A stretch of 63,774 nt of DNA, filler included, from Octopus bimaculoides (GCF_001194135.2; 5 parts of 4 records of this genome joined end to end with filler, not necessarily neighbours in it); one strand, 5' to 3'; shown: positions 13,162 through 45,811, counted from the first letter of the whole stretch. Notes: generated by a model from the letters alone, not told the origin. Program-made: numbers and translations.

Positions 13162-13587
13162 ATAAAGTGATAGTATGTTGTCAACTTAATGTGAGAGACC
13201 CATAAAAGGGAAAGATGCTACTGCTATTTAGCCCTGGGAAACACCGTGTCCTGTTGGACTTGACACATTTCCTGTGTCCTTATGTTTTCAAAGTGGAGAC
13301 AAGCACCTCCACCCAGCAAAGCCAGCATCCAGAGACTGGTTTCAGAGTCATTGTTCATCATCAGTCTGGAGTAATCTCTTGATGCTGGCTTTGCTGGGTG
13401 GAGGTGCTTGTCTCCACTTTGAAAACACAAGGACACAGGAAATGTGTCAAGTCCAACAGGACACGGTGTTTCCTAGGGCTAAATAACAGTAGCATCTTTC
13501 CCTTTTATGGGACTGTCGCAGTAAGTTGACAACATACTATCTCTTTATCGTGCTGCTACTGCATATATTTCTCTGAGAGATTTAGAA

Positions 13588-13589
<2 letters not shown>
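13162..13589. mobile_element. fold-back copy of the hammerhead-bearing ~350-bp element
   Basis: About 170-bp near-identical inverted arms (13162-13333 and 13377-13548). It is homologous to 34673-34885 and ends with the same CTCTGAGAGATTTAGAAAT motif. Confidence 0.9.
13328..13370 (-). ncRNA. minimal type I hammerhead ribozyme (slightly decayed)
   Basis: TCCAGA-CTGATGA-TGAACAATGACTCT-GAAA-CCAG-TC-TCTGGA: perfect 6-bp stem I and GUC triplet; stems II and III each carry one change relative to 34636. Confidence 0.8.
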
Positions 13590-22642: not shown

Positions 22643-24122
22643 GCACACACAAGAGCCCTTTTCAGAGTTATTTACTTTGAATTGTTATTATCTCATATCT
22701 GATTAGCCTGTTATTACATAACATGCTTCACGGTTTTAGTATACATACCTTATTAGTATTTCCTTCTATGTACTATATACTCTGTGAACGTATTAAAGCC
22801 CTTTTCGGGGCTACTTTATTTGAATTCTTACTATCATGTAACTAATTTCATGTTATTACATAACTGACTTCACAATTTGGGTTTCCATAACTTATTGGGA
22901 ATTCCTAAAAACAAGATCCTGTGTAAGACAGTTCAGTATTCTCTGTAAATGCACAAAAACCGTTTTACAGGTGACATACTTTGTATTGTTGTTATTGGAT
23001 TAGCAAAACAATTATGAGAATGGAACCAATGGATAAGCCCTGCTTTCCCAGGAATTATCGGGTACTTCAACTATTATATATATATATATATAAATTAAAT
23101 TAAAAGGGTAAAGGATTATCAATTTATTAATTAATAAATCAATCAATAATTAATAATTTTTTTACCAAGCCCATCGGTATGAAAGCACCATTATTGGTGG
23201 AGAACTTATTCATTTTNNNNNNNNNNNNNNNNNNNNNNNNNNNNNNNNNNNNNNNNNNNNNNNNNNNNNNNNNNNNNNNNNNNNNNNNNNNNNNNNNNNN
23301 NNNNNNNNNNNNNNNNNNNNNNNNNNNNNNNNNNNNNNNNNNNNNNNNNNNNNNNNNNNNNNNNNNNNNNNNNNNNNNNNNNNNNNNNNNNNNNNNNNNN
23401 NNNNNNNNNNNNNNNNNNNNNNNNNNNNNNNNNNNNNNNNNNNNNNNNNNNNNNNNNNNNNNNNNNNNNNNNNNNNNNNNNNNNNNNNNNNNNNNNNNNN
23501 NNNNNNNNNNNNNNNNNNNNNNNNNNNNNNNNNNNNNNNNNNNNNNNNNNNNNNNNNNNNNNNNNNNNNNNNNNNNNNNNNNNNNNNNNNNNNNNNNNNN
23601 NNNNNNNNNNNNNNNNNNNNNNNNNNNNNNNNNNNNNNNNNNNNNNNNNNNNNNNNNNNNNNNNNNNNNNNNNNNNNNNNNNNNNNNNNNNNNNNNNNNN
23701 NNNNNNNNNNNNNNNNNNNNNNNNNNNNNNNNNNNNNNNNNNNNNNNNNNNNNNNNNNNNNNNNNNNNNNNNNNNNNNNNNNNNNNNNNNNNNNNNNNNN
23801 NNNNNNNNNNNNNNNNNNNNNNNNNNNNNNNNNNNNNNNNNNNNNNNNNNNNNNNNNNNNNNNNNNNNNNNNNNNNNNNNNNNNNNNNNNNNNNNNNNNN
23901 NNNNNNNNNNNNNNNNNNNNNNNNNNNNNNNNNNNNNNNNNNNNNNNNNNNNNNNNNNNNNNNNNNNNNNNNNNNNNNNNNNNNNNNNNNNNNNNNNNNN
24001 NNNNNNNNNNNNNNNNNNNNNNNNNNNNNNNNNNNNNNNNNNNNNNNNNNNNNNNNNNNNNNNNNNNNNNNNNNNNNNNNNNNNNNNNNNNNNNNNNNNN
24101 NNNNNNNNNNNNNNNNNNNNNN

Positions 24123-24489: not shown

Positions 24490-24992
24490 AAAGGAATCAT
24501 CATTATTTAACATCCATTGTCCATGCTGGCATGGGTTGGACAGTCTGACCAGGACTGGCATGCTGAAAGGCTGCATCAGACTCCAAACTGTTTTGGCATG
24601 GTTTCTACGGCTAAATGCCCTTCCACAATGACAACCACTCCGAGAGTGCAATGGGTTCTTTCACATGCCACCAGCACAGGTGCCATTTGCATGACACCAG
24701 TATCTGCCACGGCTTCAGTTTTACTTGACTTGATGGGTCTTCTTCTCAAGCACAACATGATACCAAAGATCTTGGTCATTACCCCTGTGAAGCCCAATAT
24801 TCCAAAGGTGTTCCAGCCACTTTGCCTCCATGAGGCTCAATGCTCAAAAGGTGCTCTTTACATGCCACTTGCAAGGGTGCCAGTTACATGACACCAACAT
24901 CAGCCATAACTGTGATTTCACTTGGCTTGACGGGTCTTCTGAAGCACAGCATATCACCAAATGTTTCAGTCACTATTCATTGCCTCTGTAAG
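24490..24992 (-). mobile_element. RTE LINE 3' end (3' UTR, internal ~190-bp duplication, (GAT)n tail)
   Basis: Minus strand ends CCCATGCCAGCATGG...GTTAAATAATGATGAT; 24875-24992 is the reverse complement of 25965-26085. Confidence 0.85.
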
Positions 24993-26095
24993 GCTCAAAG
25001 AATTCAAGGTAGAAGTAGGGGTTCACCAAGGATCAGTCCTAAGCCCCCTCTTGCTCATCATAGTCCTCCAGGTAATAACAGGAATTTAAGACAGGCTGCC
25101 CCTGGGATCTCCTCTATGCTGATGACCTTGCTCTAATAGCTGAGTCACTACCAGAGCTAGAGAAGAAGTTCCAGGTATGGAAGCAAGGTCTAGAATCAAA
25201 GGGCTTATTAAGTAGGAAAGCAGTCCAATCACAAATCCCTTCAGGTAGAGGGCCCTGCTCGATCTGTAGAAAAGGTGTAGGTAATAACTCTGCAAGATGG
25301 ACCCAGTGCAAGCTTTGGACACATAAAAAGTGCAGCAATATCAGAGGAAGGTTAACAGGGAAAATAGCTTTTGTGTGTGGTAGATGCACAGGTGCAATAA
25401 ACACCGAAAATGTACAGAAAATAGACTCTATTAACTGCCATGGGGATAAGCTAGAAGAGTAGATAACTTTCATTACCTAGGTGATCAAGTTAGTAGCAGA
25501 GGTGGATGCTCTGAGAGTGTAGCTGTGAGAATAAGATTAGGCTTGGCAAGGTTTAGAGAGCTCGTGCCTCTGCTGGCAACAAAAGGCCTCTCTCTCAGAG
25601 TGAAAGGCAGATTGTATGATGCCTGTATGCAAACAGCTTTGCTACATGGCAGTGAAACATGAGCTGTGACAGCTGAGAACATGCGTAAGCTTATAAGAAA
25701 TGTAGCCAGTAGGCTTTGCTGGATGTGCAATATCTGTGTGCATGTTCAACAGAGTGTAAGCATCTTAGGAGAAAGTTATGCATAAGCGGCATCAGATGTG
25801 GTGTGCAAGAGAGACGGACGTACTGGTATGGTCATGTGATGTATATGGATGAGGACAGCTGTGTAAGGAAGTACCAGTCCCCAACTGTGGAGGGAACCTG
25901 TGTTAGAGGTAAACCCTGGAAGACATGGGATGAAGTGGTGAAGCATGATCTCTCAACTTTGGGCCTCACAGAGGCAATGAATAGTGACTGAAACATTTGA
26001 TGATATGCTGTACTTCAGAAGATCCATGAAGCCAAGTGAAATCACAGTTATGGCTGATGCTGGTGCCATGTAACTGGCACCCGTGCAAGTGTCAT
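24993..26095 (+). pseudogene. RTE-clade LINE ORF2 C-terminal half (RT) with PHD-like Cys-rich insert
   Basis: GVHQGSVLSP, LLYADDL, CSIC...C..WTH..C...C..C, FHYLG, LLHGSET, WYGHV, GKPWKTW; frameshifted. Confidence 0.95.
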
Positions 26096-27324
26096 GTGTG
26101 TGTGTGTGTGTGCGCGTGTGTGTGTGAGCACGTATGTCTTTGTATCTGTTTGTCCCCACATCACCACTTGACAACCAGTGTTGGTGTGTTTACGTCCCCA
26201 TAACTTAGCAGTTTGACAAAAGAGACTGATAAAATAAGTACTAGGCTTAAAAAATAAGTCTTTGGGTTGATTTGATCAACTAAAACCCTTCAAGGCAGTG
26301 CTCCAGCATGGCCACAGTCAGATGACTGAAACAAGTAAAAGAATATATATATACTATCTGAAATGTCATTTACTAATGAGTTCATTTCACTTGTGGGGTG
26401 GATTTTGAAAAACCAATTCACACACACACACACACACACACACAGATCAGAGAAGTAATGTGTACCTAACTAATACTTTGATACTGTTATTAACCGCAAA
26501 ACTAAACAGTAAAGAAATGTGGAACCCAGTTCACTAAAGTGATATAGTGAGGCTTTGTTGTCATGGTGACGTTATGACATAAGTGCAAGGTATAGATGAA
26601 CTCACATAATGGTAGCAGTAGAGGAATTTAATGATAAAATTTAGAGATTTTGTCTCATAAACAGGAACAAATAGTCTTTTCTTCTCAAAATAAATATAGG
26701 TTGCACAGTGAGTGATGTAGTGTTGTATGTAATTGTTGCTGTTGTTGATGCTGCTGCAGTTCTTGTTGTTATTACTGCTGCTACTTGTAGCTGTTGCTGT
26801 TGTGGTTGTTGTTCTTTTAATTGCAAATCAGCATTGATCATAGATAACAATGATCAATGGCTTTCCAGTCATGACCAATCTGCCTGTATAGACTTATCTA
26901 GTATGTTCTTCATTTTCTTTATAAGGTGTCAAGCTGTTTTAAGGGGGATTTGGCTGTTATGTCCAGGAGGTCCACTGACTACACTCAGACTTCTTCATTG
27001 GCTTGTGACGTAATGACTAATGGGAGAAGGAACTGTTATAACAGAAAATATAACTCATCTTGTCTAAAGCATCATTTTCATTCTTGAATGGATAAGATCA
27101 AATGGTGCCACTGGTATGGCAGCAACACTCATTTACAATTAACATATGATGTGAAATCATAGAGACACTAACACACACACACACAATATATATATGTATA
27201 CAAATATAAACATATACATATTTATGAATAAATGTATACCTATAAACATATACACATATCAATATATACGTATACAAATATATCCATATGTAAATATATC
27301 AAATATATATATACATATACATTT

Positions 27325-28559: not shown

Positions 28560-29260
28560 AAGTTAGTTTCATTGTGATGGGCAGGTCTTATCATGAGCCT
28601 CATATCACCAGTCATTTCTTCTGTGAAGCTCAGGATTCTGATGTTGGTCTTCACCACTTTGTCCCATGTCTTCTTGGGTCTGCCTCATCTACAAATTTCA
28701 TCCACATTTAGTGATTGGCACTTCTTCATACAGATGTCCTCATCCATATGCATCACATGACCATACCAGCACTGTCTTCTTTCATGCCCATTGCATCTAA
28801 ATCCTCTTATACCCATCTTTTCTCTCAGCACATTTATATTGTCATTCATGTACACTAACACTGCACATCCAAAGAAACATACTCACTTCATTTCTTTGCA
28901 GCCTTCTCACGTCCTCTGCATTCAAGGCCTATGTTGCACTACCAAGCAGCATTGCAGTTTTAACACAAGAATCATACAATCTACTCTTCACTGTAAGAAA
29001 AAGATTTTTGTTGCCCACAGTAAGAGTAACTCCATGAACTCTCTCCAACCCATTTTTACTATAGTTACTATACTTTCTACCGCCTATGAACAGAACAGGA
29101 ACACAGGAGTACAAAGAAAACGAGTTACACAACTTCAGAGCCAACTTCTTGCCCTCATTCCCAACAGACCAGCAGTATCCAACCTGCAACAGATCCTTCT
29201 CAACCCACATCAGATTGATTGGCCACAGCCAGACACCTCACGACCTATCTTCTTCTCATA
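28560..29260 (-). pseudogene. RTE LINE ORF2 C-terminal fragment (same family as 24993)
   Basis: VKSRLYDSCVKTAMLLGSAT, WYGHV, GRPKKTWDKVVK on minus. Confidence 0.85.
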
Positions 29261-29845: not shown

Positions 29846-32180
29846 ACATAGCCACACCCAGTATAGTTCTCTATTAGTCAATCTCTTACTTTTGATATCA
29901 CACAAATCAATGCATATACATACACACAACAAATCATACAGCATTTTGCAAATTTTCCAGCTGCCTCTTGAAGCTTGTTATAAAATTAGTAGTTTTTATT
30001 GCTGCTGTTTCATCTATGGGTGTATAAAATACAAATATATTAGCATTTTCCTTTGTACACCAAAACCTAGCATAGCAAACAAGATTCTCTCATCAATTGC
30101 CATTCATTAAATTTTTACCTTTCTTACTAATTTATATATATATATATATATACATCATACATGTATCATTATTATTGTTGTTGTTGTTATTAATGCAGCG
30201 AGTTGGTAGAACTTAGACAGGGTGCTTAGTAACACCTTGAGTTCTTAGTTCAAATTCTGATAACATCAATTTTGTCTTATCCTTTTAGGAGAGGTGAGTA
30301 GTGCTTTTTACGTGACACAAGTACAGGGGAGGTCAGTTTTGGTAAGGTTTTTATAGCTGGATGCCCTTCCGAACACCAACCACTTTACAGTGTGGACTGA
30401 GTGCTTTTAAGTGGCACCTGCACTAAAAAAAAAACTTTCAAGAAGGGAGGAAGCATTGGAAGAGGTGATCTTGTGTTGGATGATGAAAAGGCTATAGTGA
30501 GACAGATGTGGATGTCTTGCTGTAGAGGAAGTACAAGGTTACCCAGCCAGAGCAAGAAAGATCAGGAATGTACGGGAGAAGAAGAGAGGGAAGTACAGGA
30601 GAAGAAGAGAGAGTGGGAGACAGCAGGATAGAGATGGTGGCAAAATGCAAGGCATACACATAAGGAATGGGGATAAGAATGTAAATGGGATAGTTGAGTA
30701 AAGGAAGAGAGAGATATAGATGGTGGCAAGTGCCAGGGCCACAGTCTAATACCTGGCCACAGTCTAATGGTTGAAACAAGTAAAAGATAAAAGACTGGGA
30801 CAAATGGGTATCACAGAAAAATAGACAAACAAAAAGAATGAATTGAAAATAAGCTATAAGGTAAGGGGGGAAATTGCAGCCATGGAGAAAAAAGGGAGAG
30901 AATCACAGAGAAACACACACACATGTATTTACAATCATATTTTTATGTTGACATAGATTAGATATACAAAACATTTTTGAGGCAGATTTTCTATTGCTGG
31001 ATATTTTTCTTGTCACCAAACCTTCACTTGTTTTTCAAGAAAGGTATTTTTCATTCCACTGGTCCATTCATGTCCAATGAACAAAAAGACGTTCATTGCA
31101 TGGGAAAATGTAAACAAGGTCACCACTTTTTGCTCAGATGATGTTAATGAGAACACACAGAATCGATATTCACATGCACAGTCTTACACACACACACACA
31201 CACATCTCTCAGAAACGCCATTGCACCCAACAATACACAACCATGCACTTTTAAATATGCTCATTGGAGATGCAGCACTTGTCTCTCTACATTAACAACA
31301 CTTGAAGTTTAGCAGCTCAACCAGTAGAAAATGATACAATAGGTAGATTGTAATCTGAAATATGTAATGGAGTTGATATGATTAAAATCCTTAAAAGCAG
31401 TGCCCCAGCATGGCTACAATTCAATGAGTGTAACCAGAAAAATAATGAAAGAATATACATATACACATAAGAAGAGAGAACTCTAAGTTAAGACAGATGG
31501 ATAGTGAGATAAAAACATTAATATATACCTATATATACATTACATAAATATCAGAGAATTACATTCTTTGTATTTTAGGAATATCACATGTTTTAGTATG
31601 TAATTAAATATACAGAAATATATCCAAGTTTCTTGAATTTTGTAGAACATATGAAATAGTTGCTCATTTTCTTTAAACTGTCATGATAGCAGGTGTTTAC
31701 ATATTCTTACTATGGGTAAGAAGTTTATGTGTTTGCATGTGTGTGTGTGTGTAACTGTGATTGTATAAAAAAAAATTTATACATACCTGTTGTTTAACAA
31801 ATTTATACATATTGGTTTCTCCATATGCTTCACTTACTTTGTGTACTTAGAGTGTCTTTGTTGCCAGGGAAACATCATTCGGCACTGAAATACCTCACAA
31901 CACACACACATACATACACATATGTATATACACGTAGACATGAACAAAAGTATATGCTGGTAGATAGGAAGAGAAATATGTTGTCACATGTAAATACATG
32001 TTCAGGTGTACTGTTGGGTCGATGTCAGTCTTAATTCTTTGCTCTGTAACTCTGAAAATCCTTTGTGTACCACCAGGTGAAATATTCTAACGAGAAATTA
32101 ATTAACAGCTTAAAGATATTAATACATTTTTAATAAAGTTGGTGGAACTGAAATAAGTGGTAGAACTTTAAGCTAAATCC

Positions 32181-32719: not shown

Positions 32720-32878
32720 TGCAGGTGTAGCTGTGTGGTTAGAATATAGCTTTCCAACCATATGGTCTTGGGTTCAGTCCCACTGCACTTCACCTTGGAC
32801 AAATGTCTTCTACTATATGCCCAGGTCAATCAAAGCCTTGTGAATGAATTTGGTAGATGGAAACTGAAAGAAGGCCAT

Positions 32879-32937
<59 letters not shown>

Positions 32938-33136
32938 TTGTCCCACCCCACCATCACTTGAAAACTGGTGTGAGTGTGTTTAAATACCAGTAACTTAGCA
33001 ATCTGGCAAACAGAAATTAATAGAATAGGTCAATAGGCTTAAAAATAAGTACAGGGGTCTATTTATTCAACAAAACTCAAAGCAAAGCTCCAGCATGGCC
33101 ACAATCTGATGAATGATACAACATAAAGGAATAAAA
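32720..33136 (+). mobile_element. family A SINE
   Basis: GCTGTGTGGTTAG...GGGTTCAGTCCCACTGC...CTCCAGCATGGCCAC. Confidence 0.85.
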
Positions 33137-34516
33137 GGTGTGTGTGTGTGTGTATTTGTGTCTCCTTGTCTTGACATTGTATAGTTGTAAATGAGTGTCA
33201 TTCTGTGAAAACATTTGTGGCCAGCAGGGAAATATAACATTGCTTGGAACAGGTCAGGGTTGGTGACAGGAAGGGTATCAAGTCATAAAATATTTGCCTC
33301 AATAAACTCCATTTGACCCATGCAAGCATGGAAAAGTGGACTCAAAACGATGATGATGATGAGTATAGAGTTCCAAGAAGATCTTGAACTTTTACCAAAA
33401 TATTTTTGAAATTTTTTTATTTCTCTTGTACTTTATTGATTCCGGTAAGTCATAGTTGTGTCGTTATTGCTAACATCAACTATTTCTCATGCCAGTTTCA
33501 TTTGTAACTATTGTAAAAAAAAAAAAAGTGCAGCGATTAATTAATGAATTTTTTACTCTTTTATTGATTTCATTTACTTGGCAGTGGACATTCTGAAATG
33601 TTGCACTTCAAAGACAAACTTTGTTCATAAAGAATTTATATATTTTTATTATTATGGAGCATTTGAACATTTAAAAAGAGAATTTATGAAATTCTATTTT
33701 ATTTTAAGTCAATTTTTCCTAATGATTTTTTAACATTTCAAAGAAAATTTTAATGAAAATTTACTTTACTGATTATCTTTGAACATTCCTAATTAGTTTC
33801 ATATTTGAATTGAGATAAATTCACAGGAATAAATAACTACACATAGTGCATGCCATGATTTTACCAAAATTTTCCAGGCAAATTTTCAGATTTTTTTTTT
33901 TTTTTTGACTATCTTTGCTATGTAAATTATGCTGTCATACAGAATGTTACTTAATTAAATTTCATCTAATTATGAGAGATTACGATGACATAGCTTAGCA
34001 GTGAGCAAGTGATCAAACAGTATTTCTGATGAAATGTTTAGGTGGGGTTGCAATCACACAACAAAGGTCATACAGTTGGTTTGACTAAAAACACAAACTA
34101 CAAAAGAAAAAACATTATAATAATATTTAGCTATTACTCACCATGGATTTAAATTTATCATAAATGAAACCAACTTGAAGCAGTTTTTACTGATCATCAC
34201 AAAATGCAGATTTTGCTTCCAATTTTGCATTCAAATATGACTGTCACTTAATATCTGTGGTATGTTGGAATGAGACGACTGAGAGAGAGAGAGAGATTGC
34301 CACGAAAGAAGTCATAAAATATCGCAGACGATGTTTACGATTCCAGTGAACAATTATTCATTCAGCGAATGCCGAACTGTAAATAAGTGGGGATACATTG
34401 TGTATGTGTGTGTGGTAACTGTTCAGTTTAGTGATATTAAAAAGTAAATAAAAATTAAGAAGGAGGTATCTAGTAAAGGGCCATACACAAGTCAACTTAC
34501 TGTTAACAAATCCCAA

Positions 34517-34895
34517 TCTCTGAGAGATTTAGAAATATTATATTTCTAATTTTGCTGATCAGTGAATAAACTTCACTATGATTTATATAAGTTTGCGAAG
34601 GCGAAACAGGCTTCGCTATCCAGCTGGCAAGCTACTTCAGGCTGATGACGAGCAAAGACTCAGAAACATGTCCCTGAATGCTGGCTAGGCTGGGTGGAGG
34701 AGCTTGTCTCCCCCTCGCAAACTTAAGGACACAGTAATTGAGTCAAGGCCGACAGGAAGCGGTCCAGCTTCCTAGGGCTAAACGGCAGTAGTGTGTTCCC
34801 TTATTGGGATTGTCACATTAAGTTGACAATATACAACTTTATCGCTCCACTACTGCTTAAATCTCTCTGAGAGATTTAGAAATATTATATTTCTA
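34517..34895 (+). mobile_element. ~347-bp hammerhead-bearing unit with 32-bp terminal direct repeats (retrozyme-like)
   Basis: TCTCTGAGAGATTTAGAAATATTATATTTCTA at 34517-34548 and 34864-34895; no ORF; central HHR; many hairpins. Confidence 0.8.
34636..34678 (+). ncRNA. minimal type I hammerhead ribozyme, intact consensus
   Basis: TTCAGG-CTGATGA-C-GAG(CAAAGA)CTC-A-GAAA-CATG-TC-CCTGAA: 6-bp stem I, palindromic ACATGT stem III, GUC cleavage after 34672. Confidence 0.9.
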
Positions 34896-35708
34896 TATAT
34901 NNNNNNNNNNNNNNNNNNNNNNNNNNNNNNNNNNNNNNNNNNNNNNNNNNNNNNNNNNNNNNNNNNNNNNNNNNNNNNNNNNNNNNNNNNNNTCGTATTT
35001 CAAGGCTTCATAGTTTAAACAAATTACATGCGAAGCGCATTTGTTCATCAAAATTATATTCCATCATATTCTATTGTCTGTTCTCATCGTTGTGCCACAA
35101 GCTCAATTCCACATTTATACCATTTGGCTTGTTTAAAGGTAAAAATCTCCCTATATCCGTTTTCAACCTCATCCACGTTGTTGAACTTTCATCTGTGCAG
35201 GAAAGGAGTCAACGGTCTGGGCTGTAGGCAGAGTGGGGCAACACTTCTAGCCCCACACGTTCATACTTGGTTACATCGGAATGTGTGCTGGAAAAATTGC
35301 TTTTTTTTTTTTTCCTGTTTCCACCGCCAATACCAGCACTACTACCACCATGACAAAACCCACAATGATCACCACCACTTCATTGTTCCTCGATAGAGGA
35401 ATCCGGAAAAACTTGTGCGATATTGAGTTTTCTTCCTTACTTAAACCAAGCATGGAGTTATAACATTATTTGGTGAATAAAGTATTGCTATAGGATTTGT
35501 ATTGTCATTCCTTCTTATGATAGTTTACTCATTGAGTCAAATATGAACAAAGTCCTACACCTCAAAGACTGAGCACAATAGTGCTGAAGTCAAACACTGT
35601 TTCGCAATAAATACAATTTTCTCACCAGTATTCTCGATATCAACTACATGTTCATCCTTCGCAAATTTCTAGTAGCGAGACAAATTTCTCTTATGTGATA
35701 TTGAAGTC

Positions 35709-35915
35709 ATATTTTTTATTACCCACGAGGGGCTAAACATAGAAGGGGACAAACACCATCGGGGAACTAAAATTATAAAATGGAGGTATAAAGAAAGAAA
35801 CAAAATAAAAGAAAAGAATGAATTATGAAAAAGATGATATAATGAGGCGAAATGCTCACTCGACCCCCCGACGTCGAGTGGTTACATTGATACCGTTTTG
35901 TCCTTCAGTACCTTC
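35709..35915 (-). mobile_element. 5'-truncated L1/Tx1-like 3' end flanked by a 15-bp target-site duplication
   Basis: TGTGATATTGAAGTC at 35694-35708 and 35916-35930; the insert begins with a T-rich tail and TTATTACCCACGAGGGGGCTAAACATAGAAGGGGAC. Confidence 0.75.
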
Positions 35916-36003
35916 TGTGATATTGAAGTCGACTAGCCTTTTACGGTTTCAGCACGTTAATCTGTAATGATTGGTCATCTTACCTGTTATGTGAGTTTGG
36001 AAC

Positions 36004-36176
36004 ATTGGTTGAGTCCTGTGCTTTGATTGGTCAAGTATTGCGCGGGATATGGATTGATGATCCAATCACGTTGCGCGTGATACATTTTGAACTAATCTGA
36101 ATTTGCGCTGGAGCCTACCCTCCTTCTATATATAGGTCTAACAGATGATCTATGAGCAATGTACTAGAAGGTGAGT
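36004..36176 (+). promoter_or_regulatory. candidate Pol II promoter (3 CCAAT boxes, TATA) and donor site
   Basis: ATTGG at 36004 and 36026, CCAAT at 36062, TATATATA at 36127-36134, AAG|GTGAGT at 36170/36171; locally CpG-retaining. Confidence 0.4.
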
Positions 36177-37769
36177 CATGTTAGTTTTCTGCTGCTATTC
36201 GCCAGAACAGAATTATTATAAGAGAGCATAACTACAGCCAGTGCTATACAACCATCAGTAATCGTGATGTGTTTATTTTGTCCACTGTAATATTTAACGG
36301 AAGAATGAACTCTCGCTGTTACTTTTAAAGTTTTATTATTTCCATAAGTGAACACGCAACATATATTATAATGGTATGTAAGACTCCGTAGTAAAACCAA
36401 GTTGAGGCTATATACCATTCCGTTATATTCCTACCTCAACACACTATTTGAATTTTTCAAGACTTTTATAAATGTGAGGGCAGAATAAATTGTCTAAAGG
36501 ATATCTGCATTAATTAAATCAGAGAATGTTTATGAAACATCAACTTGTAATTTGCAATCCGCTGTCAACAGAATCCTTGAATCAAATTTCCTCAAGTCTT
36601 AAAATTCCTGGCTAAAGAATCCAGACTTAACAAGACGGTGCTACCAGAACAAAATTCCATGATACGAGATGGTTTTATTTATGAAATAATATCAACTGTT
36701 CTACGTGCCAGAACATTAAACTTCGCTCAAAAGAATATAAGTGTTTATAAACCATGACGTTTTCGTAATGTTCCAAAGGACACTAGACAGGAAACTATTT
36801 CACTAGCTACTTCTCTGAAATGTGTGTGCAAGTATAGACATGAACGTAGAGAACGTCTAGCAAGAGATGCCATAAATGACATGATAACAAAATAGTGGGG
36901 GTAAGTCAATATACACACTTGAAACAGCCTTAGATTAAAATACCGGTGTGTATAATATGTGAATACAAACATGGAAGAGCACTGTTAAAAACGCACAGCT
37001 TTGCTCAGAATTCCAAGCCAGACACGATGTTTCAACCCGATTTGGTTTCCTCAGGAAACACCATATCTTATGATCTGAATGAAGCCTTGTGTTCTTGCCA
37101 CACAAATCTTTTAGACATGTTTCTCTGAGACAAAATATTACAGTCAGTGTAGTTCCACACTTGCGCATATACGTAGTCTGATCAATATACAAATGTTTAC
37201 TTCCAAAATAGACAACTTCGATTTCCAGTTTAGGGCGACATGTCAGACATTGCTCCAGCTGAGGTCATTGTCTTATCTGCTTCCCCTAAAATTGCTAGCT
37301 TTGTGCCAAAATAAGACGGTTATTTCTTAGGACATGTAAGGCGTGGAGCGGTGTGTCGGTAAAATATTTTTTGGTACTTCTTCCGACTCTTTCCATTTTG
37401 AGTTCAAATCCCATCGAGGCCAGCTTTGCTTTCCATCGCTCCAGAATGGATAAAATACCACTGTCCCCTAAAAATTTCAGTCATTGTGCCTATATTTGCA
37501 GTTCCTTCTTACAACAAATAACTTCAACTTTAATTCCTCCAGGAATTCCTAAAATAAAGTACCAGCAAATACTAGAGTACACGATATCGGCCAACCCCCT
37601 TCTCCCTCTCAAAACAGCTGGCCTTATGTCTAAATTAGGAGTAATTTCTTGTGATTGGAACGCAAGCATGATCGAGACAAATCTAGGGTTATAGAACATA
37701 TCAACACGCAAAACCATTCTTTCGAAAAATAATTAGAACCTACCCCTTCCGTGATCTAAACTTACGTGA

Positions 37770-38120
37770 CTGTGTGGTAAGAAGTTTGCTTCCAAATCAC
37801 GTGGTTCTGGGTTCAGTCCCACTGTCTGGAATATTTGGCAAGTGTCTTCTACTATAGCTTTGGGTTGACCAAAGCCTTGTAAATGGATTTAGTAGGTGGA
37901 AACTGAAAGAAGCCTTTTGTCTTCCACCACCGTTTGACAACCGGTGTTGGTGTGCTTACGTCCCTGTAACCTAGTGGTTCTGCAAATGAGACCGATAGAA
38001 TAAATACCAAGCTTTAAAAAAAAGTAAGTACTGGGGTCAGATCATTTGATTAAATATTCTTGATGGTGGTGCCCCAGCATGGCCACAGTCAAATGACAGA
38101 AACAAACAAAACAAAAGATA
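37770..38120 (+). mobile_element. family A SINE
   Basis: GTGTGGTAAGAAGTTTGC...GGGTTCAGTCCCACTG...CAGCATGGCCACAGTC. Confidence 0.9.
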
Positions 38121-38744: not shown

Positions 38745-39000
38745 CTTTTTTTTATCGAGGCATCATCCAGTCAGCCTGATTGCCCGGGCCAGCCTGATTA
38801 CCTCTCTCCATCCCTCCCGATTTTTCATTAGACTTTTTAGGTCTTCAATTTGGAATCCAACATCATCTGTAAGCTGATGTATATACGTCTTCCGTGGTCT
38901 TCCGGCCGCTGTGGTACCATGATTTGGTGTCCACAGCAACACATTACACGCTAGTTCTTCTTTACTTCTCCAGCAGTGGTCAGCAAACCTCAATCTCCGC
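38745..39000 (-). pseudogene. RTE LINE ORF2 C-terminus
   Basis: RFADHCWRSKEE...LLWTPNHG...GRPRKTYIHQL...MKNREGWR is a typical RTE C-terminus. Confidence 0.9.
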
Positions 39001-41990
39001 TTTTGAATGGTTGATGAGAAGGTTGGTACATTCCCATATAACCGTTGTCATGACTATAGATCATTCCAGAGTCTCATACACAGTCTCAAAATGCAGAATA
39101 ACATCATGGCATTAATTCGTGACGCTTTTGTCTCAGGAATAAATTCATCGACCATTCGTTAATGCTTACTTGAATCTACCGAAGACAACCTAGAATCATT
39201 GATAAAAATTTCTTTAACCATGGAATTAACCAACGTGGATGCAAGGAAGTTGTCAAGAATGAATTCCCCCTTCATACTCCAGTTCTGACACCTTAAAGAA
39301 AACGATCTAGCTACAAGTGTGGTGAGTCTATTCACCCAAAATCAACATATCCAGTCACGAATTCTACCAATTAACTACTGCCGAAAAGAACACTGAGCAA
39401 CCGTTTGCCCCACAAAGAAACCAATTTTTTTCATGATCAGAACAGAAGGTAACGGAGACCGCGAAAACGATCCAACAGACGATAATTGTGCTTCAATTTT
39501 TCAGCTAGCCATCGTCTGGAAATGAACAAAACTCATTAAAGTTTTAAGTAAATGGTCACACAACAAACGCTCTACTGGACACTGAAGCAGATAGGACTTT
39601 TATTTGTCTAGATCTAGTATTTGGGCTTCCTCTAACAATGTAAAAAAAAAACGCTTATCGTTTTAGCCGGTAACAGTCAATTGAAGATCCTATCACGAAG
39701 CAGAAGTGTATAGCGTTAAGTCATTCGTATCATCGATTCTATTAAGAATGGATGTTTTAAGATTGCACAAAGCGCTAGTGTTAAGACGGAATCCAATCTC
39801 TGATTGCGTTTCTCTAAAGGAATTAAGTTGCCAACGTTTAAGTCTACTGCTCGGCGTCGATACATCCAAATCAACACCGATCGCTACGAAATCGTGATGA
39901 AATTATCACAGAGGGTTCATCGAAGGTGAAATCAGTAGAATGTTGAAAGATAGGATTATTCAGGGAAATAGAAGCGCATAGTGCTCATGGTCATTTGTTA
40001 TGTCAAGAAAGAATAAGTCAAGGCTAGTAGTCGACTATTCCAAAACCATATATCACTTTAGTCCTATTGCTGCTTACGTTGCACTTAAAATTAATGATTT
40101 ACATGAAAGAATCACGTCTAATCATTACTTGTCTACTATCGAGTTGAAAGAAGCCTACTACTAAATTCCATTGCACAAAGAGGATTTTCATTTCACGGCT
40201 TTTGAAGTCTGTAACAAACTGTTCGAATTACAAGCCTACCATTCGGGTGTACCATTGCCGTGGCCATCTTTCAACACATTATGGATTCTCTTCAAAAGAC
40301 CTGTTGTTACATCGATGATATCACCATCGGAGGCGAAACAAAGGAAAAACACGACAGTAATTTGGCCAAATTGTAGCAACCAGATGGGCAAGCCGACATG
40401 CAACATCCATCCGCTTCCTAGGACATGCGATAGAGCAAGGAACGCTTAAACAAGATCCAGAAAGATATCAGACATCATGGAGCTTGAAGAATTTAACACC
40501 ATTGGAGGATTAATTAGCGGATTATTTGCGTATTACGCTAAGTGTATTCCGAATTGTTCAGAACTAACCATGCATTTAACGAACGATCAAGAATCTATCA
40601 AAAAAGACGGTTTAACTTCGGTGGATATGAGTGGCAAATTAACACTCAAACGAGGGTTTGTGAAATCGATCCTGGCAGCTCCAGACTTTAACATGACCAC
40701 TCTTTATACAGACAAGTGCATATGAGGTGGCATCGGGCGGTGTATTATCTCAGGGTGGAAGGTGAGTGGCATTCTATAGCCGAATACTTCAAAATGCCGG
40801 GAGACACCAATAAGCCATAGAAAATGAAGCTTGTGCAATAGTGGAATGTTGCATACGTTGGCGATATCTTATAATTGCAAACACTCAAGTACAATTCTAA
40901 TTCCAAAATTCTTGATACAGGCCACCCTATCCTGGAAACGAATGTCTATCGACTTTGTTAGACCGATAACCAAATATTCCGATTTTACTTACTTTTTAAT
41001 GAATACCCGCATCATCCCTTTTCTTTTCCGTGTAAATGGATATCTAATAAAGTGGTCATTGAGAAACTGGATGAACTTTTCTCTCTTTTCTGGAAGCCTT
41101 AATGCAGTTCACTCAGACAGGGTGCTCAATTTGAAGCGGCGAAGTTCAGAGCCTTTCTATTGGCGAATGGCGTAATCAAGACCAGAACTATTCCAGATCA
41201 TCCTTAAAGAAATGGTCAATACGAGCGAATGAACACGACTATATGCAAGACAATAGCTCTTGGTTTGAAGTCAGAAGGGTTATAGAAGACTGAGTGGACC
41301 AAGGTAGTTCCACTGGTCTTAGCTTCTATCAGAGGTCTTTTATGCACAGCAACCAACGAAACTCCTCCCGAAAGAATATTTACTTTTCGCATCGTCTTGA
41401 GACTCGACTCCGATCTGCCATCGCTCTTAATCAACGTTGGTTCAACGGCTTTACTTCGAAGTCATCTAGTTCGAAAAGGTGATTCACTTGTAGAGAAGGT
41501 TAAATTATCGGAAACTCTTACCAAATTCCTCACGGGTACAGTTTGACAACAGCTGCACCACTGCAGTTCGAGATCTTGCTTACTATCCCCCAGATTCATC
41601 GTTAGAAAAAGGTAATAAATTGTTCTTAGACACTCCTGTTCAATGAAACAATTCTTACTAGACGCAATACTGTCCAGATACACAACCGGAAATATCTGTG
41701 TTGTCATCGGCAGACCCAGCTGAACCAACATTGGACCATAGTAAGGAAGCTTTAGAAAATTCGCCGGATAATGCACACGATCTTGGAATTCTCACGAGCA
41801 GTTTCGTAACAACCAGGTTAAACCGAGTAGTGAGGTCATTGCTTGACGATTACGTACTAGACATCGAACGCAGCAGAGAAGGCTGATGTGATGGTGTTTT
41901 TAATCCATCATTCACAGCAGTCCTATACTTTTTGTCTTCTTTCTCTTCTGTCTCGCTTCCATCCATATTATATAAATCTCTTAACTAACT
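39000..41990 (+). mobile_element. decayed Gypsy/Ty3 LTR retrotransposon (gag-pol remnant, probable 3' LTR start at about 41887)
   Basis: IRDAFVSGI (gag), RLVVDY, LKEAYY.IP, TAFE (RT), IEKEACAIV-like (RNase H), PWKRMSIDF and VHSD (integrase). A purine tract AGAGAAGG is followed by TG. Many stops and frameshifts. Confidence 0.9.
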
Positions 41991-41996
41991 ATAGAT

Positions 41997-42358
41997 GCGC
42001 GCATGATTGTGTGGCAAGAAGCCTGCCTCCCAACCACATGGTTCCGAATCCAGTCCTATTGAGTGGCACCTTGGGCAAGTGTCTTGCACTATAGCCTTGA
42101 GCCGACCAAAGCTTTGTGAGTGGGTTTGGTACACGGAAACATACATACATGTGTGTGTTTGTCCCCCACAACGTTTGACAACCGGTGATGGGTTGTTTAT
42201 GTCCCCGTAACATTAGTGGTTCAGCAAAAGAGACCGATAGAATAAGTATTGGGCATAAAAATTAAGTACTGAGGCCTATTCGTTCGACTAAAATGTTCAA
42301 CGCGGTGCCCCAGCTTGACCACAGTCTAATCACTGAAACGAATGAAAAGCAAAAGATA
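41997..42358 (+). mobile_element. family A SINE
   Basis: Full head, body and tail similar to 43162. Confidence 0.9.
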
Positions 42359-42978: not shown

Positions 42979-43635
42979 CAGGGGTCTCTAGCCATCGGGC
43001 CATAGACAATTTAGTACCGGGCCGCACAGACAAAAAAAGTTCTACTTCTTTATTGACTATCAGAAACTGCGGGTTGTTCTTGCATTATTTATATGTAATA
43101 ATTAATTGTATTGATATATAATAATATATGTAATAATTAATTGTATTGATATATAATCTTAGGCGCATGACTGGCTCTGTGGTAAGTAGCTTGCTTACCA
43201 GCCACATGGTCCCGGGTTCAGTCCCACTGAGTGGCACCTTGGGCAAGTGTCTTCTACTATAGCCTCGGGCCAACCAAAGCCTAGTGAGTGGATTTGGTAG
43301 ACGGAAACTGAAAGAAGCCCGTCGTATATATGTATATGTATATATGTGTGTCTGTGTTTGTCCCCCAACATCGCTTCACAACCAATGCTGGTGTGTTTAT
43401 GTCCCCGTAACTTAGCGGTTCGGCAAAAGGGACCGATAGAATAAGTACTAGGCTTACAAAGAATAAGTCCTGGGGTCGATTTGTTCAACTAAAAGCGGTG
43501 CTCTAGCCTGGCCGCAGTCAAATGACTGAAATAAGTAAAAGAGTAATTATATATTATGCAGTTTGTTTTGCCATGCGTGAGATACCCCGGTTCATGGAAA
43601 AATTGTCTTGCATGAAACGGTCAGTGGTGCAAAAA
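42979..43635 (+). mobile_element. MER1-like hAT-Charlie non-autonomous element interrupted by a SINE
   Basis: 5' CAGGGGTCTCTAGCCATCGGGCC...ACCGGGCCGCACAG and 3' CCCCGGTTCATGGAAAAATTGTCTTGCATGAAACGGTCAGTGGTGCAAAAA resemble MER1/Charlie termini. Confidence 0.6.
43162..43545 (+). mobile_element. family A SINE, full length, little diverged
   Basis: tRNA-like head GGCTCTGTGGTAAG...GGGTTCAGTCCC, (TA/TG) middle, GTAAAAGAGTA tail. Confidence 0.95.
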
Positions 43636-44192
43636 AAAAAAAGAAAGAAAAAATACCATCTGCAACCCTAAAAAATATTATTTTCAAGACGAAGAAGGTT
43701 GTCAGAAATCACCTTCACTGAAAGAGGCAGGTCGAGGGGAGATAATATTTACTGCAGCTCGATTATTCCCCCTGATTTTCTTAATCTTATTTCAAAAATA
43801 TTCTTTCATTGTAGTTGTCGAAGACCTCTCGGTCGTTTATTTTTATCCGTTTTGCTTAATTTTCTCTCCTTTTGTCCCCAGAAATAGATCATCTTTTTTC
43901 TTCGATCCTTGTTTTTTTCCTTTACTTACAACAACATTAAATTATAAAGGTTTAAACAATGAAATTCAGAATCGTTTTACTTCTTTCCACTCCAAATAAT
44001 TGGACCAAGGAGACCAGCTTTTTTGCCGCAGAATTGTGGCCACGATTGTGACATGATAAAGTCCAACGGAGTTTATAAATAGATCAGATTCTCATAGAGA
44101 AGTTAATCGATTTTTCAATTTTTTATCTACTAAGAAAATATTCTACATTCGCAGATAAAAATAATTTCGTTCACTTTTTCTGAACAATATCT

Positions 44193-44445
44193 AGCTTGCT
44201 TACCAACCACATGGTCCCGAGTTCAGTCACACTGCGTGACATCTTGGACAAGTGTCTTCTACTATAGCCTAGGGCCGACCAAAGCCTTGTGAGTGGATTT
44301 GGTAGACGGAAACTGAAAGAAGCCCGTCGTATATATGCATATATATATGTATGTGTGTCTGTGTTTGTCCCCCAGCATCGCTTGACAACCGATGCTGGTG
44401 CGTTTATGTCCCTTATGCGTTTATGTAACTTAGCGGTTCGGCACC
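44193..44445 (+). mobile_element. family A SINE, partial
   Basis: TAGCTTGCTTACCAACCACATGGTCCCGAGTTCAGTC... Confidence 0.9.
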
Positions 44446-45811
44446 TATAAAGCGCTTAGTTGTATAGTCGACTTGTATACATATATGTGTGTATCCTATA
44501 TCTAAGGTTAGTATATAGGAATAAATTAACCAGAAGGGTACAGTAATAGCTCTCAGATATATTCCAGGTTCCAGCTAACCACATTAAGTAGTTATAAACA
44601 TCAACGATCGTTTAGTAAAAGCAATTTTGCGGTAATTCTTCAGATGAATAACTAAAGGATTGGCTTCCCTGAATTATGAATATTATCAGGAATGTAAATT
44701 TCTAATGTATATATGCATACATGAGAGCAGAAAGAGACATAAAATCACCTATTTTCTAAATTTCCGAAACAACCTATGAAAATCAATATCAATAAAGGAT
44801 ATGAATTCATTTGGACTTGCATCATTATATCGCCAAATAAAATAATTATATTTAACAATTTCTTTTTTCTTTCTCTTATTGTGCATGACCCCATCAACAA
44901 CTATTGTTACGTGCTATAATTTCTAAAAAAAAATATCGAATTTTTTTAATGAAGAATTCTTTTGTTTGTATGTCAGCTTCATCTGCTCTGTCTTGGCCAT
45001 CAATCCCATAATATATAATACAATTATAAATTTAAATTTTTAATGTTTTTTATCATTGAGCACTTCTTCATGTGAGTCGAGCAAACATGAAAATATTCCC
45101 GTTGTCTGTTCTAGATTCTTCCCAATTGAGAGTTGAGCGATATCTACTGCAACCTCAAAAAAAAAAAAAAAAAAACAGGTTGTAACTTTTCTTCTTCGTC
45201 AAGCTTTCGTTTCAAAACCAATACTGTTTTGTCAACATAAACACAATCTACTTTATCCCCCACGTTATCGTCGCGATATCTGGTTGCTGTATCATCATCT
45301 GCAGACTGTAGGCGTGCTTAACGTTGTAACATTCCAGGTGGTTTTCTAAAAACTATCCAATTACCTAGAACAAAGGTTTCGTAAGTTTCACCTTCAGTTC
45401 TGTCTTCCTTCTTCCTGTTTCTGTGCATCAAGTATACACACTGATTACGGTGGTTCAACGAATTCTGTCTAACAGGAATATTCCAGCATCTAAACTTACG
45501 TATCTACACATGCGAATATACATCCATACGCACACACTGTTTCAGTTAACTTACTGAGTCCTCTTTTCTTTCAGTTTGTAGTGCTAAGTATAATTTATCC
45601 ACAGTTTGTGTGTGTGTGAATATATCTATGCACAGACGTGTGTGTTTAAATATATATATATATATATATATTTGTATATTACGCACACACGTCTGTGCAT
45701 ATTTATATATANNNNNNNNNNNNNNNNNNNNNNNNNNNNNNNNNNNNNNNNNNNNTTAATTAATTAANNNNNNNNNNNNNNNNNNNNNNNNNNNNNNNNN
45801 NNNNNNNNNNN

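What the first reader, a model, noticed from the sequence alone, without database searches (positions are those of the whole stretch)
34517..34895. Candidate octopus non-LTR retrozyme: 347-nt unit, intact GUC hammerhead, terminal direct repeats
Seen: a non-coding unit of period 347 bp bounded by an exact 32-bp direct repeat, with a fully consensus minimal type I HHR (34636-34678) and multiple hairpins. A diverged homolog lies at 13162-13589, and an assembly gap follows immediately. Established: non-LTR retrozymes described in some metazoans (cnidarian, bivalve, amphibian) are non-autonomous units of a few hundred nt with type I HHRs, often in tandem, processed into abundant circular RNAs and thought to depend on PLEs. 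Minimal HHRs with palindromic stem III work as dimers. Inference: a retrozyme family in a cephalopod, where I am not aware of a characterised one. The adjacent gap may hide a tandem array, which would provide the two HHRs needed to excise a monomer.
Basis: partly seen in the sequence, partly recalled or inferred. Interest (0 to 1): 0.9.

Follow-up and report, generated by a model that had tools for sequence, protein, structure and literature searches.

The report
Solo hammerhead-ribozyme retroelement copy (retrozyme-like)
This is most likely a single, probably dead-end copy of a short non-coding mobile element that carries a self-cutting hammerhead RNA motif, a known kind of element (animal "retrozyme") that I could not find described for cephalopods; nothing shows that this copy is active.

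Summary
The sequence features are real. An exact 32-bp direct repeat (34517-34548 / 34864-34895) bounds a 347-bp non-coding unit. A type I hammerhead (HHR) motif lies at 34636-34678, at the tip of a ~138-nt hairpin. The unit RNA folds far better than shuffles (z about -7.4).

The HHR is not "fully consensus". The normally conserved G10.1-C11.1 pair is a C·A mismatch, and Rfam reports no hammerhead there. A covariance model built only from three experimentally validated retrozyme HHRs (coral, mussel, axolotl) ranks this site first in the piece (17.8 bits, E about 0.003). Its helix III plus cleavage site (GAAACAUGUC) is identical to that of an axolotl retrozyme.

Only 1.09 units are assembled. 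After the second 32-bp copy the sequence turns into TATATA, then a 92-N gap, and the post-gap DNA is unrelated. No reverse transcriptase or GIY-YIG coding remnant lies nearby.

Best reading: a solo, longer-than-unit insertion of a 347-nt retrozyme-like element. The 32-bp overrun matches the 30-40-bp "tail" left by Penelope-like element (PLE) machinery. With one weakened, dimer-dependent ribozyme, this locus cannot excise a circle by itself.

Copy number, tandem arrays, circular RNA and the host organism could not be tested. It is a new member of a known kind, of modest interest.

The parts
34517..34863 (+). One 347-bp unit of the non-coding element (43.8% GC; local background 37.8%)
   Evidence: Period defined by the exact 32-bp repeat. 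Longest open frame is 42 aa. Linear fold -126.9 kcal/mol, z -7.4. Circular fold -125.5 kcal/mol, 67% paired, z -7.4. GC.
34517..34548 (+). First copy of the 32-bp terminal repeat. It holds two small palindromes, TCTCTGAGAGA and TTAGAAATA-TTA-TATTTCTAA; the second is complete only in this copy, because it needs A34549.
   Evidence: hairpin in the MFE and the centroid structure.
34588..34725 (+). Long imperfect hairpin of about 138 nt. It extends helix I of the ribozyme, so the HHR sits at its tip.
   Evidence: MFE and centroid structures. Inverted similarity 34588-34624 / 34689-34725.
34636..34678 (+). Type I hammerhead motif. Helix I 34636-41 / 34673-78 (6 bp). CUGAUGA 34642-48. Helix II C49·A62, G50-C61, A51-U60, G52-C59, with loop CAAAGA 34653-58. 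GAA 34663-65. Helix III A66-U71 and C67-G70, with loop A68 U69 (palindrome ACAUGU). C17 = 34672, cleavage 34672^34673. Internal loop UAC 34633-35 / U 34679 closes helix I.
   Evidence: Sequence. Only hit of my descriptor in the piece. Top hit of model R1, built from coral, mussel and axolotl retrozyme HHRs: 17.8 bits, E 0.0032. No Rfam hit.
34864..34895 (+). Second copy of the 32-bp repeat. It is the start of a second unit and then stops. Read as overrun ('tail') of a longer-than-unit cDNA.
   Evidence: 100% identical to 34517-34548. The next bases differ from the first copy. PLE insertions carry an optional 30-40-bp (31-bp in Adineta vaga) 3' extension (PMC8557442, PMC11167929, PMC3846280).
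34896..34992 (.). TATAT (34896-34900), then 92 N. Probably an AT-rich or (TA)n flank that broke the assembly.
   Evidence: The sequence after the gap is unrelated to the unit.
34491..34516 (+). Flank directly upstream of the unit that resembles an inverted copy of unit bases about 34804-34827 (22 of 26 matches, 2 gaps). Marginal.
   Evidence: Local alignment score 28 against a shuffle mean of 20.1, sd 2.4, maximum 30. It could be chance, or a short inverted partial copy of the kind seen at PLE 5' ends.

Best explanation
The 379 bp at 34517-34895 are one slightly longer-than-unit copy (347 bp plus 32 bp of the next unit) of a short, non-coding, highly structured retroelement. It carries a type I hammerhead ribozyme of the kind found in animal non-LTR retrozymes.

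Inferred life cycle of the family:
1. Tandem copies are transcribed.
2. Two hammerheads pair through their palindromic helix III (ACAUGU) and cut after GUC.
3. The 347-nt monomer is circularised by a host RNA ligase.
4. A Penelope-like element RT/endonuclease copies the circular or tandem RNA into a nick in AT-rich DNA.
5. Running a little past one full turn leaves a terminal redundancy, here 32 bp.

This particular copy has a single ribozyme. That ribozyme has a weakened helix II (C·A at 10.1/11.1) and a helix III too short to fold alone. It is therefore most likely a dead-end monomer that cannot excise a circle on its own.

Shown: the repeat, the motif, the fold, the absence of coding capacity and of a neighbouring PLE ORF, and the resemblance to validated retrozyme HHRs.

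Inferred: transcription, cleavage, circularisation, mobilisation by PLEs, and the existence of other copies.
For: - Exact 32-bp terminal redundancy at 347-bp spacing.
- Because the redundancy repeats the start of the insertion, the template period must be 347 nt. That is too short for an autonomous element.
- HHR core complete with a 6-bp helix I, and the only descriptor hit in the piece.
- Model R1, built only from the coral Amil224, mussel Mg353 and axolotl Ax353 HHRs (sequences from the supplement of PMC7229834), ranks it first: 17.8 bits, E 0.0032.
- GAAACAUGUC is identical to axolotl Rtz330, and its loop 2 CAAAGA is close to that element's CAAAAA. Axolotl Rtz353 has a U·U mismatch at the same helix II position and still cleaves, better as a dimer.
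- Unit size of 347 bp is close to the 330-353 bp of the axolotl and mussel retrozymes. GC of 43.8% is within the <45-50% reported.
- Rod-like or branched fold with the HHR at the tip of a long hairpin, z about -7.4 for both the linear and the circular form.
- No ORF longer than 42 aa. No RT or GIY-YIG on the + strand within 1.7 kb upstream or 2.4 kb downstream. No match to a Poseidon PLE protein anywhere in the piece.
- The 32-bp overrun and the TATAT flank fit the PLE 'tail' and the AT-rich target preference. PLE target-site duplications reported in A. vaga are only 8-10 bp.
Against: - Only one copy could be examined. There is no second copy in the 24.6-kb piece and I had no access to the genome or to reads. 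Family membership, boundaries and conservation of the ribozyme are therefore unproven.
- Rfam's hammerhead models do not detect the motif.
- G10.1-C11.1, described as highly conserved (PMC4209133), is absent, and helix II has only 3 Watson-Crick pairs.
- The R1 E-value is modest and only roughly calibrated.
- The defining tandem arrangement is not seen at this locus.
- The 32-bp repeat could instead be an unusually long target-site duplication.
- An unconstrained co-fold of two HHR domains did not give the textbook dimer as its minimum-energy structure.
Confidence: 0.55

Rival explanations
1. One reading: the locus is really a tandem array of 347-bp units that the assembler collapsed or lost in the gap. 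Adjacent hammerheads could then excise 347-nt monomers from this very locus.
For: The contig ends 5 bp after the second repeat copy, which is typical of an assembly break at a repeat. Retrozymes are usually tandem (PMC7229834). PLE-type tandem insertions are known to break short-read assemblies (PMC8557442).
Against: The bases after the second 32-bp copy (TATAT) differ from those after the first (AATTTTGC). The gap is 92 N, and another HHR would need at least about 130 more bp. The first 400 bp after the gap show no similarity to the unit on either strand.
Confidence: 0.15
2. The element proper is only about 315 bp (34549-34863), or is a 5'-truncated end or solo pseudo-LTR of a larger autonomous element such as a PLE. 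On this reading the 32-bp repeat is a long target-site duplication in an AT-rich palindromic target.
For: HHRs sit in PLE pseudo-LTRs, and most genomic HHR copies are solo, truncated pieces (PMC4209133). Retrozyme TSDs are described as 'larger than 4 bp'. The repeat is AT-rich, like PLE targets. PLE pseudo-LTRs often start with palindromes.
Against: Documented PLE TSDs are 0-10 bp, whereas a 30-40-bp terminal extension is characteristic. The 22-nt palindrome is complete only in the first copy, as expected if the second copy is a truncated overrun of element sequence. There is no RT or EN remnant anywhere in the piece. The HHR architecture matches the retrozyme type rather than the PLE minimal type with a long helix II.
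Confidence: 0.17
3. The hammerhead-like motif is a chance match inside an unrelated, locally duplicated, hairpin-rich repeat. No ribozyme was ever involved.
For: No Rfam hit. Imperfect helix II. Random sequence of this composition gives 0.075-0.55 descriptor hits per Mb, so a whole-genome scan would meet chance hits. Only one copy was seen.
Against: Several features coincide. All 11 core nucleotides are present with a 6-bp helix I. Loop 2 is 6 nt and helix III is palindromic, as in validated retrozymes. The motif sits exactly at the apex of a 138-nt hairpin in a unit with z -7.4. It lies inside a repeat-bounded unit of typical retrozyme size. It is the top hit of an independently built model. 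A second HHR-like core 2.3 kb away suggests that such elements are common in this genome.
Confidence: 0.1

Closest known systems
Metazoan non-LTR retrozymes (Cervera & de la Pena, NAR 2020, PMC7229834): coral Amil224, mussel Mg353, axolotl Rtz330/Rtz353
   Same: - Non-coding unit of a few hundred bp (347, against 224-353) with low GC.
- One type I HHR per unit, with a 6-bp helix I and a short palindromic helix III.
- GAAACAUGUC identical to axolotl Rtz330.
- A mismatch at the base of helix II, as in Rtz353.
- Predicted compact rod-like or branched circular RNA.
- Presumed dependence on PLEs.
   Different: - Only 1.09 units are present here, not a tandem of two or more.
- No sequence homology outside the ribozyme core.
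- G10.1-C11.1 is replaced by C·A.
- Expression, circularity and copy number are unknown.
- The host would be a cephalopod, for which I found no report.
Pseudo-LTRs of Penelope-like elements with minimal hammerheads (Cervera & de la Pena 2014, PMC4209133; Arkhipova 2013, PMC3846280; Craig 2021, PMC8557442; Frangieh 2024, PMC11167929)
   Same: - Type I HHR that must dimerise.
- Palindromes at the 5' end of the repeat unit.
- A 30-40-bp terminal 'tail'.
- AT-rich insertion sites.
- Frequent solo copies.
- Trouble for short-read assemblies.
   Different: - No RT/GIY-YIG ORF next to it or anywhere in the piece.
- The terminal redundancy implies a 347-nt template period.
- Helix II is short (3-4 positions) rather than the 6-8 bp of PLE min-HHRs.
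- Helix I is 6 bp and continues into a long rod.
Classical hammerhead-bearing repeats: newt satellite 2, Schistosoma Sm-alpha, cave-cricket pDo500 (now viewed as retrozymes)
   Same: Dispersed or tandem repeats of about 330 bp with a type I HHR. From memory, not tested here: a UAC bulge six pairs from the core and a CAAAUA-like loop 2, similar to UAC and CAAAGA here.
   Different: Those families exist in thousands of copies and have demonstrated transcripts and cleavage. None of that is known for this unit.
Plant LTR retrozymes (Cervera et al. 2016, PMC4918200)
   Same: Non-autonomous retroelements whose RNA is cut by hammerheads and circularised.
   Different: The plant elements have type III HHRs in real LTRs of about 350 bp, a PBS and PPT, 4-bp TSDs, GC above 55%, units of 600-1000 nt, and Gypsy-dependent mobilisation. 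None of this applies here.

Membership tests
Hammerhead ribozyme, type I | Conserved core CUGANGA ... GAAA ... with A15.1-U16.1 and a cleavable H17 | tested here: met
   CUGAUGA 34642-48, GAA 34663-65, A34666-U34671, C17 = 34672.
Hammerhead ribozyme, type I | Helix I formed by the sequences directly 5' of the core and directly 3' of the cleavage site; open end at helix I | tested here: met
   UUCAGG / CCUGAA, 6 bp, extended by a long imperfect stem.
Hammerhead ribozyme, type I | Stable helix II closed by the conserved G10.1-C11.1 pair | tested here: not met
   C34649·A34662 mismatch, followed by only 3 Watson-Crick pairs. There is precedent for a mismatch here: U·U in the axolotl HHR_Amex2, which cleaves weakly.
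Hammerhead ribozyme, type I | Detected by curated covariance models (Rfam hammerhead families) | tested here: not met
   No hammerhead family listed at E<=1 on the piece or at E<=10 on 422 nt.
Hammerhead ribozyme, type I | Matches a model built from experimentally validated retrozyme HHRs that does not include this sequence | tested here: met
   R1 top hit 34635-34679, full model length, 17.8 bits, E 0.0032 (rough calibration).
Hammerhead ribozyme, type I | Self-cleavage at the predicted site | not testable with these tools
   Needs in vitro transcription of monomer and dimer constructs.
Metazoan non-LTR retrozyme | Non-coding unit of about 150-450 bp with one type I HHR; no LTR, PBS or PPT; GC below 45-50% | tested here: met
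   347 bp, 43.8% GC, ORFs of 42 aa or less, no Pfam domain.
Metazoan non-LTR retrozyme | Head-to-tail tandem arrangement (dimer or more), so that two HHRs flank a monomer | tested here: not met
   1.09 units assembled. The sequence diverges after the second 32-bp copy and the post-gap DNA is unrelated. The 92-N gap leaves some doubt. Families are reported to include solo monomers (bioRxiv 10.64898/2026.07.22.740005).
Metazoan non-LTR retrozyme | Compact, highly base-paired predicted circular RNA | tested here: met
   Circular MFE -125.5 kcal/mol, 67% paired, z -7.4.
Metazoan non-LTR retrozyme | Multi-copy family in the genome | not testable with these tools
   No other copy in the piece. No access to the genome. 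Indirect routes failed.
Metazoan non-LTR retrozyme | Expressed as linear and circular monomer RNA joined at the cleavage site | not testable with these tools
Autonomous Penelope-like element (pseudo-LTR of) | RT plus GIY-YIG endonuclease ORF between or next to the repeats | tested here: not met
   Pfam on the three + frames of 32800-34520 and 34993-37400 shows no RT or GIY-YIG. tblastn of Poseidon_Ac against the whole piece gives E>=15.
Autonomous Penelope-like element (pseudo-LTR of) | Optional 30-40-bp 'tail' extension at the 3' end of the insertion | tested here: met
   32-bp continuation into the next unit at 34864-34895, against 31 bp and 30-40 bp in the literature. This is a signature of the PLE insertion machinery, not of autonomy.
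Autonomous Penelope-like element (pseudo-LTR of) | [quoted passage not shown] | tested here: inconclusive
   C34649 can be read as the extra nucleotide before G10.1. An extra A34662 then precedes G12, helix II has only 3 bp, and helix I is 6 bp.

The most novel reading that the evidence does not exclude
The copy is a fossil of a living cephalopod retrozyme family. Elsewhere in the genome, tandem 347-bp units would be transcribed, cut by dimeric hammerheads, and accumulate as abundant 347-nt circular RNAs. They would be mobilised by the Penelope-like elements reported as recently active in Octopus vulgaris (PMC13282606). That would be the first ribozyme-made circRNA family in a cephalopod.
Probability: 0.25. 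Interest if true: 0.5.

Novelty: new member of a known kind. Interest (0 to 1): 0.35.

Why it matters
If a family stands behind this copy, it would extend hammerhead retrozymes and ribozyme-made circular RNAs to cephalopods. Transposable elements are abundant in cephalopod genomes, and Penelope-like elements are reported as recently active in Octopus vulgaris.

The locus also shows in one place two things that link retrozymes to PLEs. One is a retrozyme-type ribozyme. The other is a 32-bp terminal overrun of the kind attributed to internal initiation by PLE reverse transcriptase. [quoted passage not shown]

As a single, probably inactive copy of a known kind of element, it changes nothing fundamental.

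Tried and rejected
I did not try to get round this.
- Other copies through called proteins: a 328-aa concatenate of every open frame of the unit found nothing among 5.8 billion proteins.
- Exact look-ups of window ORFs next to the unit (122 aa and 205 aa): not on record.
- Sampling the host genome through the LINE fragment at 38.8 kb: one 1.2-kb Logan contig only. Neither the organism nor the family could be checked this way.
- Pattern scans for the ribozyme in the metagenome and viral collections: 0 matches.
- Rfam: no hammerhead.
- tRNA or SINE head in the unit: none. The bacterial promoter scan is irrelevant for this sequence.
- Homology of the whole unit to the coral, mussel or axolotl retrozymes: none beyond the core. 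A 17/20 AT-rich match to the mussel unit is within shuffle range.
- Paralogous 'empty site' in the piece: the flanks are unique apart from microsatellites.
- MAFFT misaligned the fourth HHR (axolotl Rtz330). It was left out of the model, which makes the test more conservative.
- Co-folding two HHR domains did not return the textbook dimer as its minimum-energy structure. I give this no weight in either direction.
- Rejected: an autonomous PLE hidden next door, and a continuing tandem array as assembled.

Full report
**What is in the sequence**

The piece is AT-rich (37.8% GC), full of microsatellites and SINE-like repeats, and has two N runs of 906 and 92 bases.

- At 34517-34548 and 34864-34895 lies an exact 32-bp direct repeat, 347 bp apart.
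- After the first copy the sequence continues AATTTTGCTGATC. After the second it continues TATAT and then runs into 92 N (34901-34992).
- The first 400 bp beyond the gap have no similarity to the unit on either strand. Alignment scores of 17-20 sit within the shuffle range of about 19 ± 2.5.
- The assembly therefore shows 1.09 units, not an array.
- No other copy exists in the 24.6-kb piece.

**The ribozyme motif**

Bases 34636-34678 read UUCAGG CUGAUGA CGAG CAAAGA CUCA GAAA CAUGU C^ CCUGAA.

- All core nucleotides are present.
- Helix I is 6 bp and is closed by an asymmetric internal loop (UAC / U). It then continues as a long imperfect stem.
- Helix III is A-U and C-G around AU, that is the palindrome ACAUGU. 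Cleavage would follow GUC, between 34672 and 34673.
- Helix II is the weak point. C34649 faces A34662 where a G10.1-C11.1 pair is normally conserved, and only three Watson-Crick pairs follow.
- Rfam lists no hammerhead here, even at E<=10 on a 422-nt search. 'Fully consensus' is therefore too strong.

*How likely is this by chance?* My own descriptor finds this as the only hit in the piece. In 40 Mb of composition-matched random sequence it gave 3 strict hits and 22 loose hits. That corresponds to about 0.002 expected in this piece. A genome of a few gigabases would hold on the order of a hundred or more chance hits, so the motif alone does not settle the matter.

*Independent test.* I took the retrozyme sequences printed in the supplement of Cervera & de la Pena 2020. 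I aligned the coral, mussel and axolotl Rtz353 ribozymes and built a covariance model with the hammerhead structure. I then searched the whole piece with filters off.

- The finding's site is the top hit: 34635-34679, full model length, 17.8 bits, E 0.0032, with rough calibration.
- The fourth sequence, axolotl Rtz330, was left out because MAFFT misaligned it.
- That sequence is the closest relative of the motif here. It has the same GAAACAUGUC and a 6-nt loop 2, CAAAAA against CAAAGA.
- Axolotl Rtz353 has a U·U mismatch at the same base of helix II. It is reported to cleave weakly as a monomer and much better as a dimer.

*Which type of hammerhead?* By the description in Cervera & de la Pena 2014, canonical metazoan type I hammerheads have a 6-bp helix I, a 4-bp helix II and a 1-2-bp helix III with a 2-4-nt palindromic loop. 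The motif here fits that. It does not fit the PLE 'minimal' variant, which has a short helix I and a 6-8-bp helix II.

**The unit as a whole**

- It is 347 bp and 43.8% GC.
- It has no open frame above 42 aa and no tRNA-like head.
- Its RNA folds to -126.9 kcal/mol, against -89 ± 5 for dinucleotide shuffles (z -7.4). The complement gives z -6.6.
- As a circle starting at the cleavage site it folds to -125.5 kcal/mol with 67% of bases paired, z -7.4.
- The ribozyme sits at the tip of a hairpin of about 138 nt (34588-34725).
- The 5' end of the unit carries two palindromes, TCTCTGAGAGA and a 9-bp-stem hairpin. The second is complete only in the first repeat copy.

**Neighbourhood**

- Pfam on the three forward frames of 32800-34520 and 34993-37400 finds no reverse transcriptase or GIY-YIG domain.
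- tblastn with the Poseidon_Ac PLE protein (supplement of PMC11167929) finds nothing in the whole piece, E>=15.
- The unit is therefore not the pseudo-LTR of an autonomous PLE sitting next to it. A 92-bp gap could not hold one.

**Interpretation**

The literature gives three relevant signatures.

1. Animal non-LTR retrozymes are 150-450-bp, low-GC, non-coding tandem units with type I HHRs. They are expressed as circular RNAs and thought to be mobilised by PLEs (PMC7229834). A 2026 preprint argues they are non-autonomous derivatives of PLE pseudo-LTRs and that families include solo monomers.
2. PLE insertions characteristically carry an optional 30-40-bp 'tail', 31 bp in Adineta vaga. It is explained by two internal RT start sites. 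PLE endonuclease prefers AT-rich DNA (PMC8557442, PMC11167929, PMC3846280).
3. Documented PLE target-site duplications are short, 8-10 bp or none.

The 32-bp redundancy followed by TATAT fits signature 2 better than a 32-bp target duplication. There is a further argument. The redundancy repeats the very start of the insertion, so the RNA template must have had a period of 347 nt, whether circular or tandem. That excludes a piece of a 3-kb autonomous element, unless the repeat is after all a target duplication.

I therefore read the locus as a solo, longer-than-unit cDNA copy of a 347-nt retrozyme-like element. It has one ribozyme, a helix III that cannot fold alone, and a weakened helix II. 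This copy cannot release a monomer by itself. It is probably a dead-end insertion.

**Rivals**

- A collapsed tandem array in the gap: 0.15.
- A 315-bp element or truncated PLE end with a long target duplication: 0.17.
- A chance motif in an unrelated hairpin-rich repeat: 0.10.

The coincidence of motif, apex position in a long hairpin, repeat-bounded unit of retrozyme size and the independent model hit argues against chance.

**Limits**

I could not obtain a second copy, read data or the organism's identity.

- A protein-space trick with all open frames of the unit found nothing.
- Look-ups of window ORFs found nothing.
- The LINE fragment gave one short Logan contig.
- Pattern scans of the metagenome and viral collections were empty.

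Papers in the library report 31 recently active Penelope-like families (336 insertions) in Octopus vulgaris (PMC13282606). No paper in the library connects hammerheads or retrozymes with cephalopods beyond a remark on PLE clades.

**Verdict**

This is a real, retrozyme-like hammerhead element copy: a new member of a known kind, with modest interest. The decisive data are genome-wide copies, the sequence across the gap, and back-joined reads at GUC^C.

Noticed in passing
window 37009-37060 (- strand); also 37114-37131 (- strand): A second hammerhead-like motif, found by the retrozyme-HHR model at 17.5 bits, E 0.004: UGUUUC|CUGAGGA|AACC-AAAUCG-GGUU|GAAA|CAUCGUGUC. The core, a 4-bp helix II and a 3-bp helix III are intact, but helix I is not adjacent to the cleavage site. 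About 90 nt upstream on the same strand, CUCAGAGAAACAUGUC resembles the 3' half of the main ribozyme. It is probably a decayed relic of another HHR-bearing element. It has no homology to the 347-bp unit, no special fold (z -1.25) and no flanking repeats.
   Followed up: partly
window 34491-34516: The 26 bp directly upstream of the unit look like an inverted copy of unit bases about 34804-34827 (22 of 26 matches, z about 3.3 against shuffles). This may be chance, or a short inverted partial copy like those at the 5' ends of PLE insertions.
   Followed up: partly
window 26288-26349, 30754-30794, 31390-31451, 33075-33136, 38059-38120, 42295-42356, 43488-43549 (with longer copies 32743-32922, 37782-37961, 42019-42198, 43187-43366, 44192-44371): A dispersed SINE-like repeat family with a conserved block ...CCAGCATGGCCACAGTC-AATGACTGAAAC..., followed by an A-rich tail. 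There are at least 6-7 copies in 24.6 kb, often next to (TG)n.
   Followed up: no
window 38763-39060 (- strand): The 3' end of a LINE-type ORF (...GRPRKTYIHQLTDDVGFQIEDLKSLMKNREGWREVIRLA...), broken by stops further upstream. Its only relative in the protein collection is a 93-aa product (70% identity) on a 1.2-kb Logan contig of run SRR11869391.
   Followed up: partly
window 24860-25000 and 25957-26097; also 25772-25987 / 28605-28820: Long inverted repeats: 141-nt arms 92% complementary and 956 nt apart, and 216-nt arms 72% complementary. These are foldback or MITE-like structures, or oppositely oriented repeat copies.
   Followed up: no
window 45620-45708: A perfect-looking AT/GT-rich hairpin around (TA)n. 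It matches several miRNA precursor families on both strands, far below their gathering scores (for example mir-3149 at 53 bits against 100). This is most likely a low-complexity palindrome at the edge of the piece.
   Followed up: no
window 43090-43157: An exact tandem duplication of a 35-bp AT-rich unit (1.9 copies).
   Followed up: no
window 23217-24122 and 34901-34992: Both assembly gaps have non-round lengths (906 and 92 N). This suggests size estimates from read pairs rather than placeholders, which bears on how much sequence the gap next to the unit can hide.
   Followed up: no
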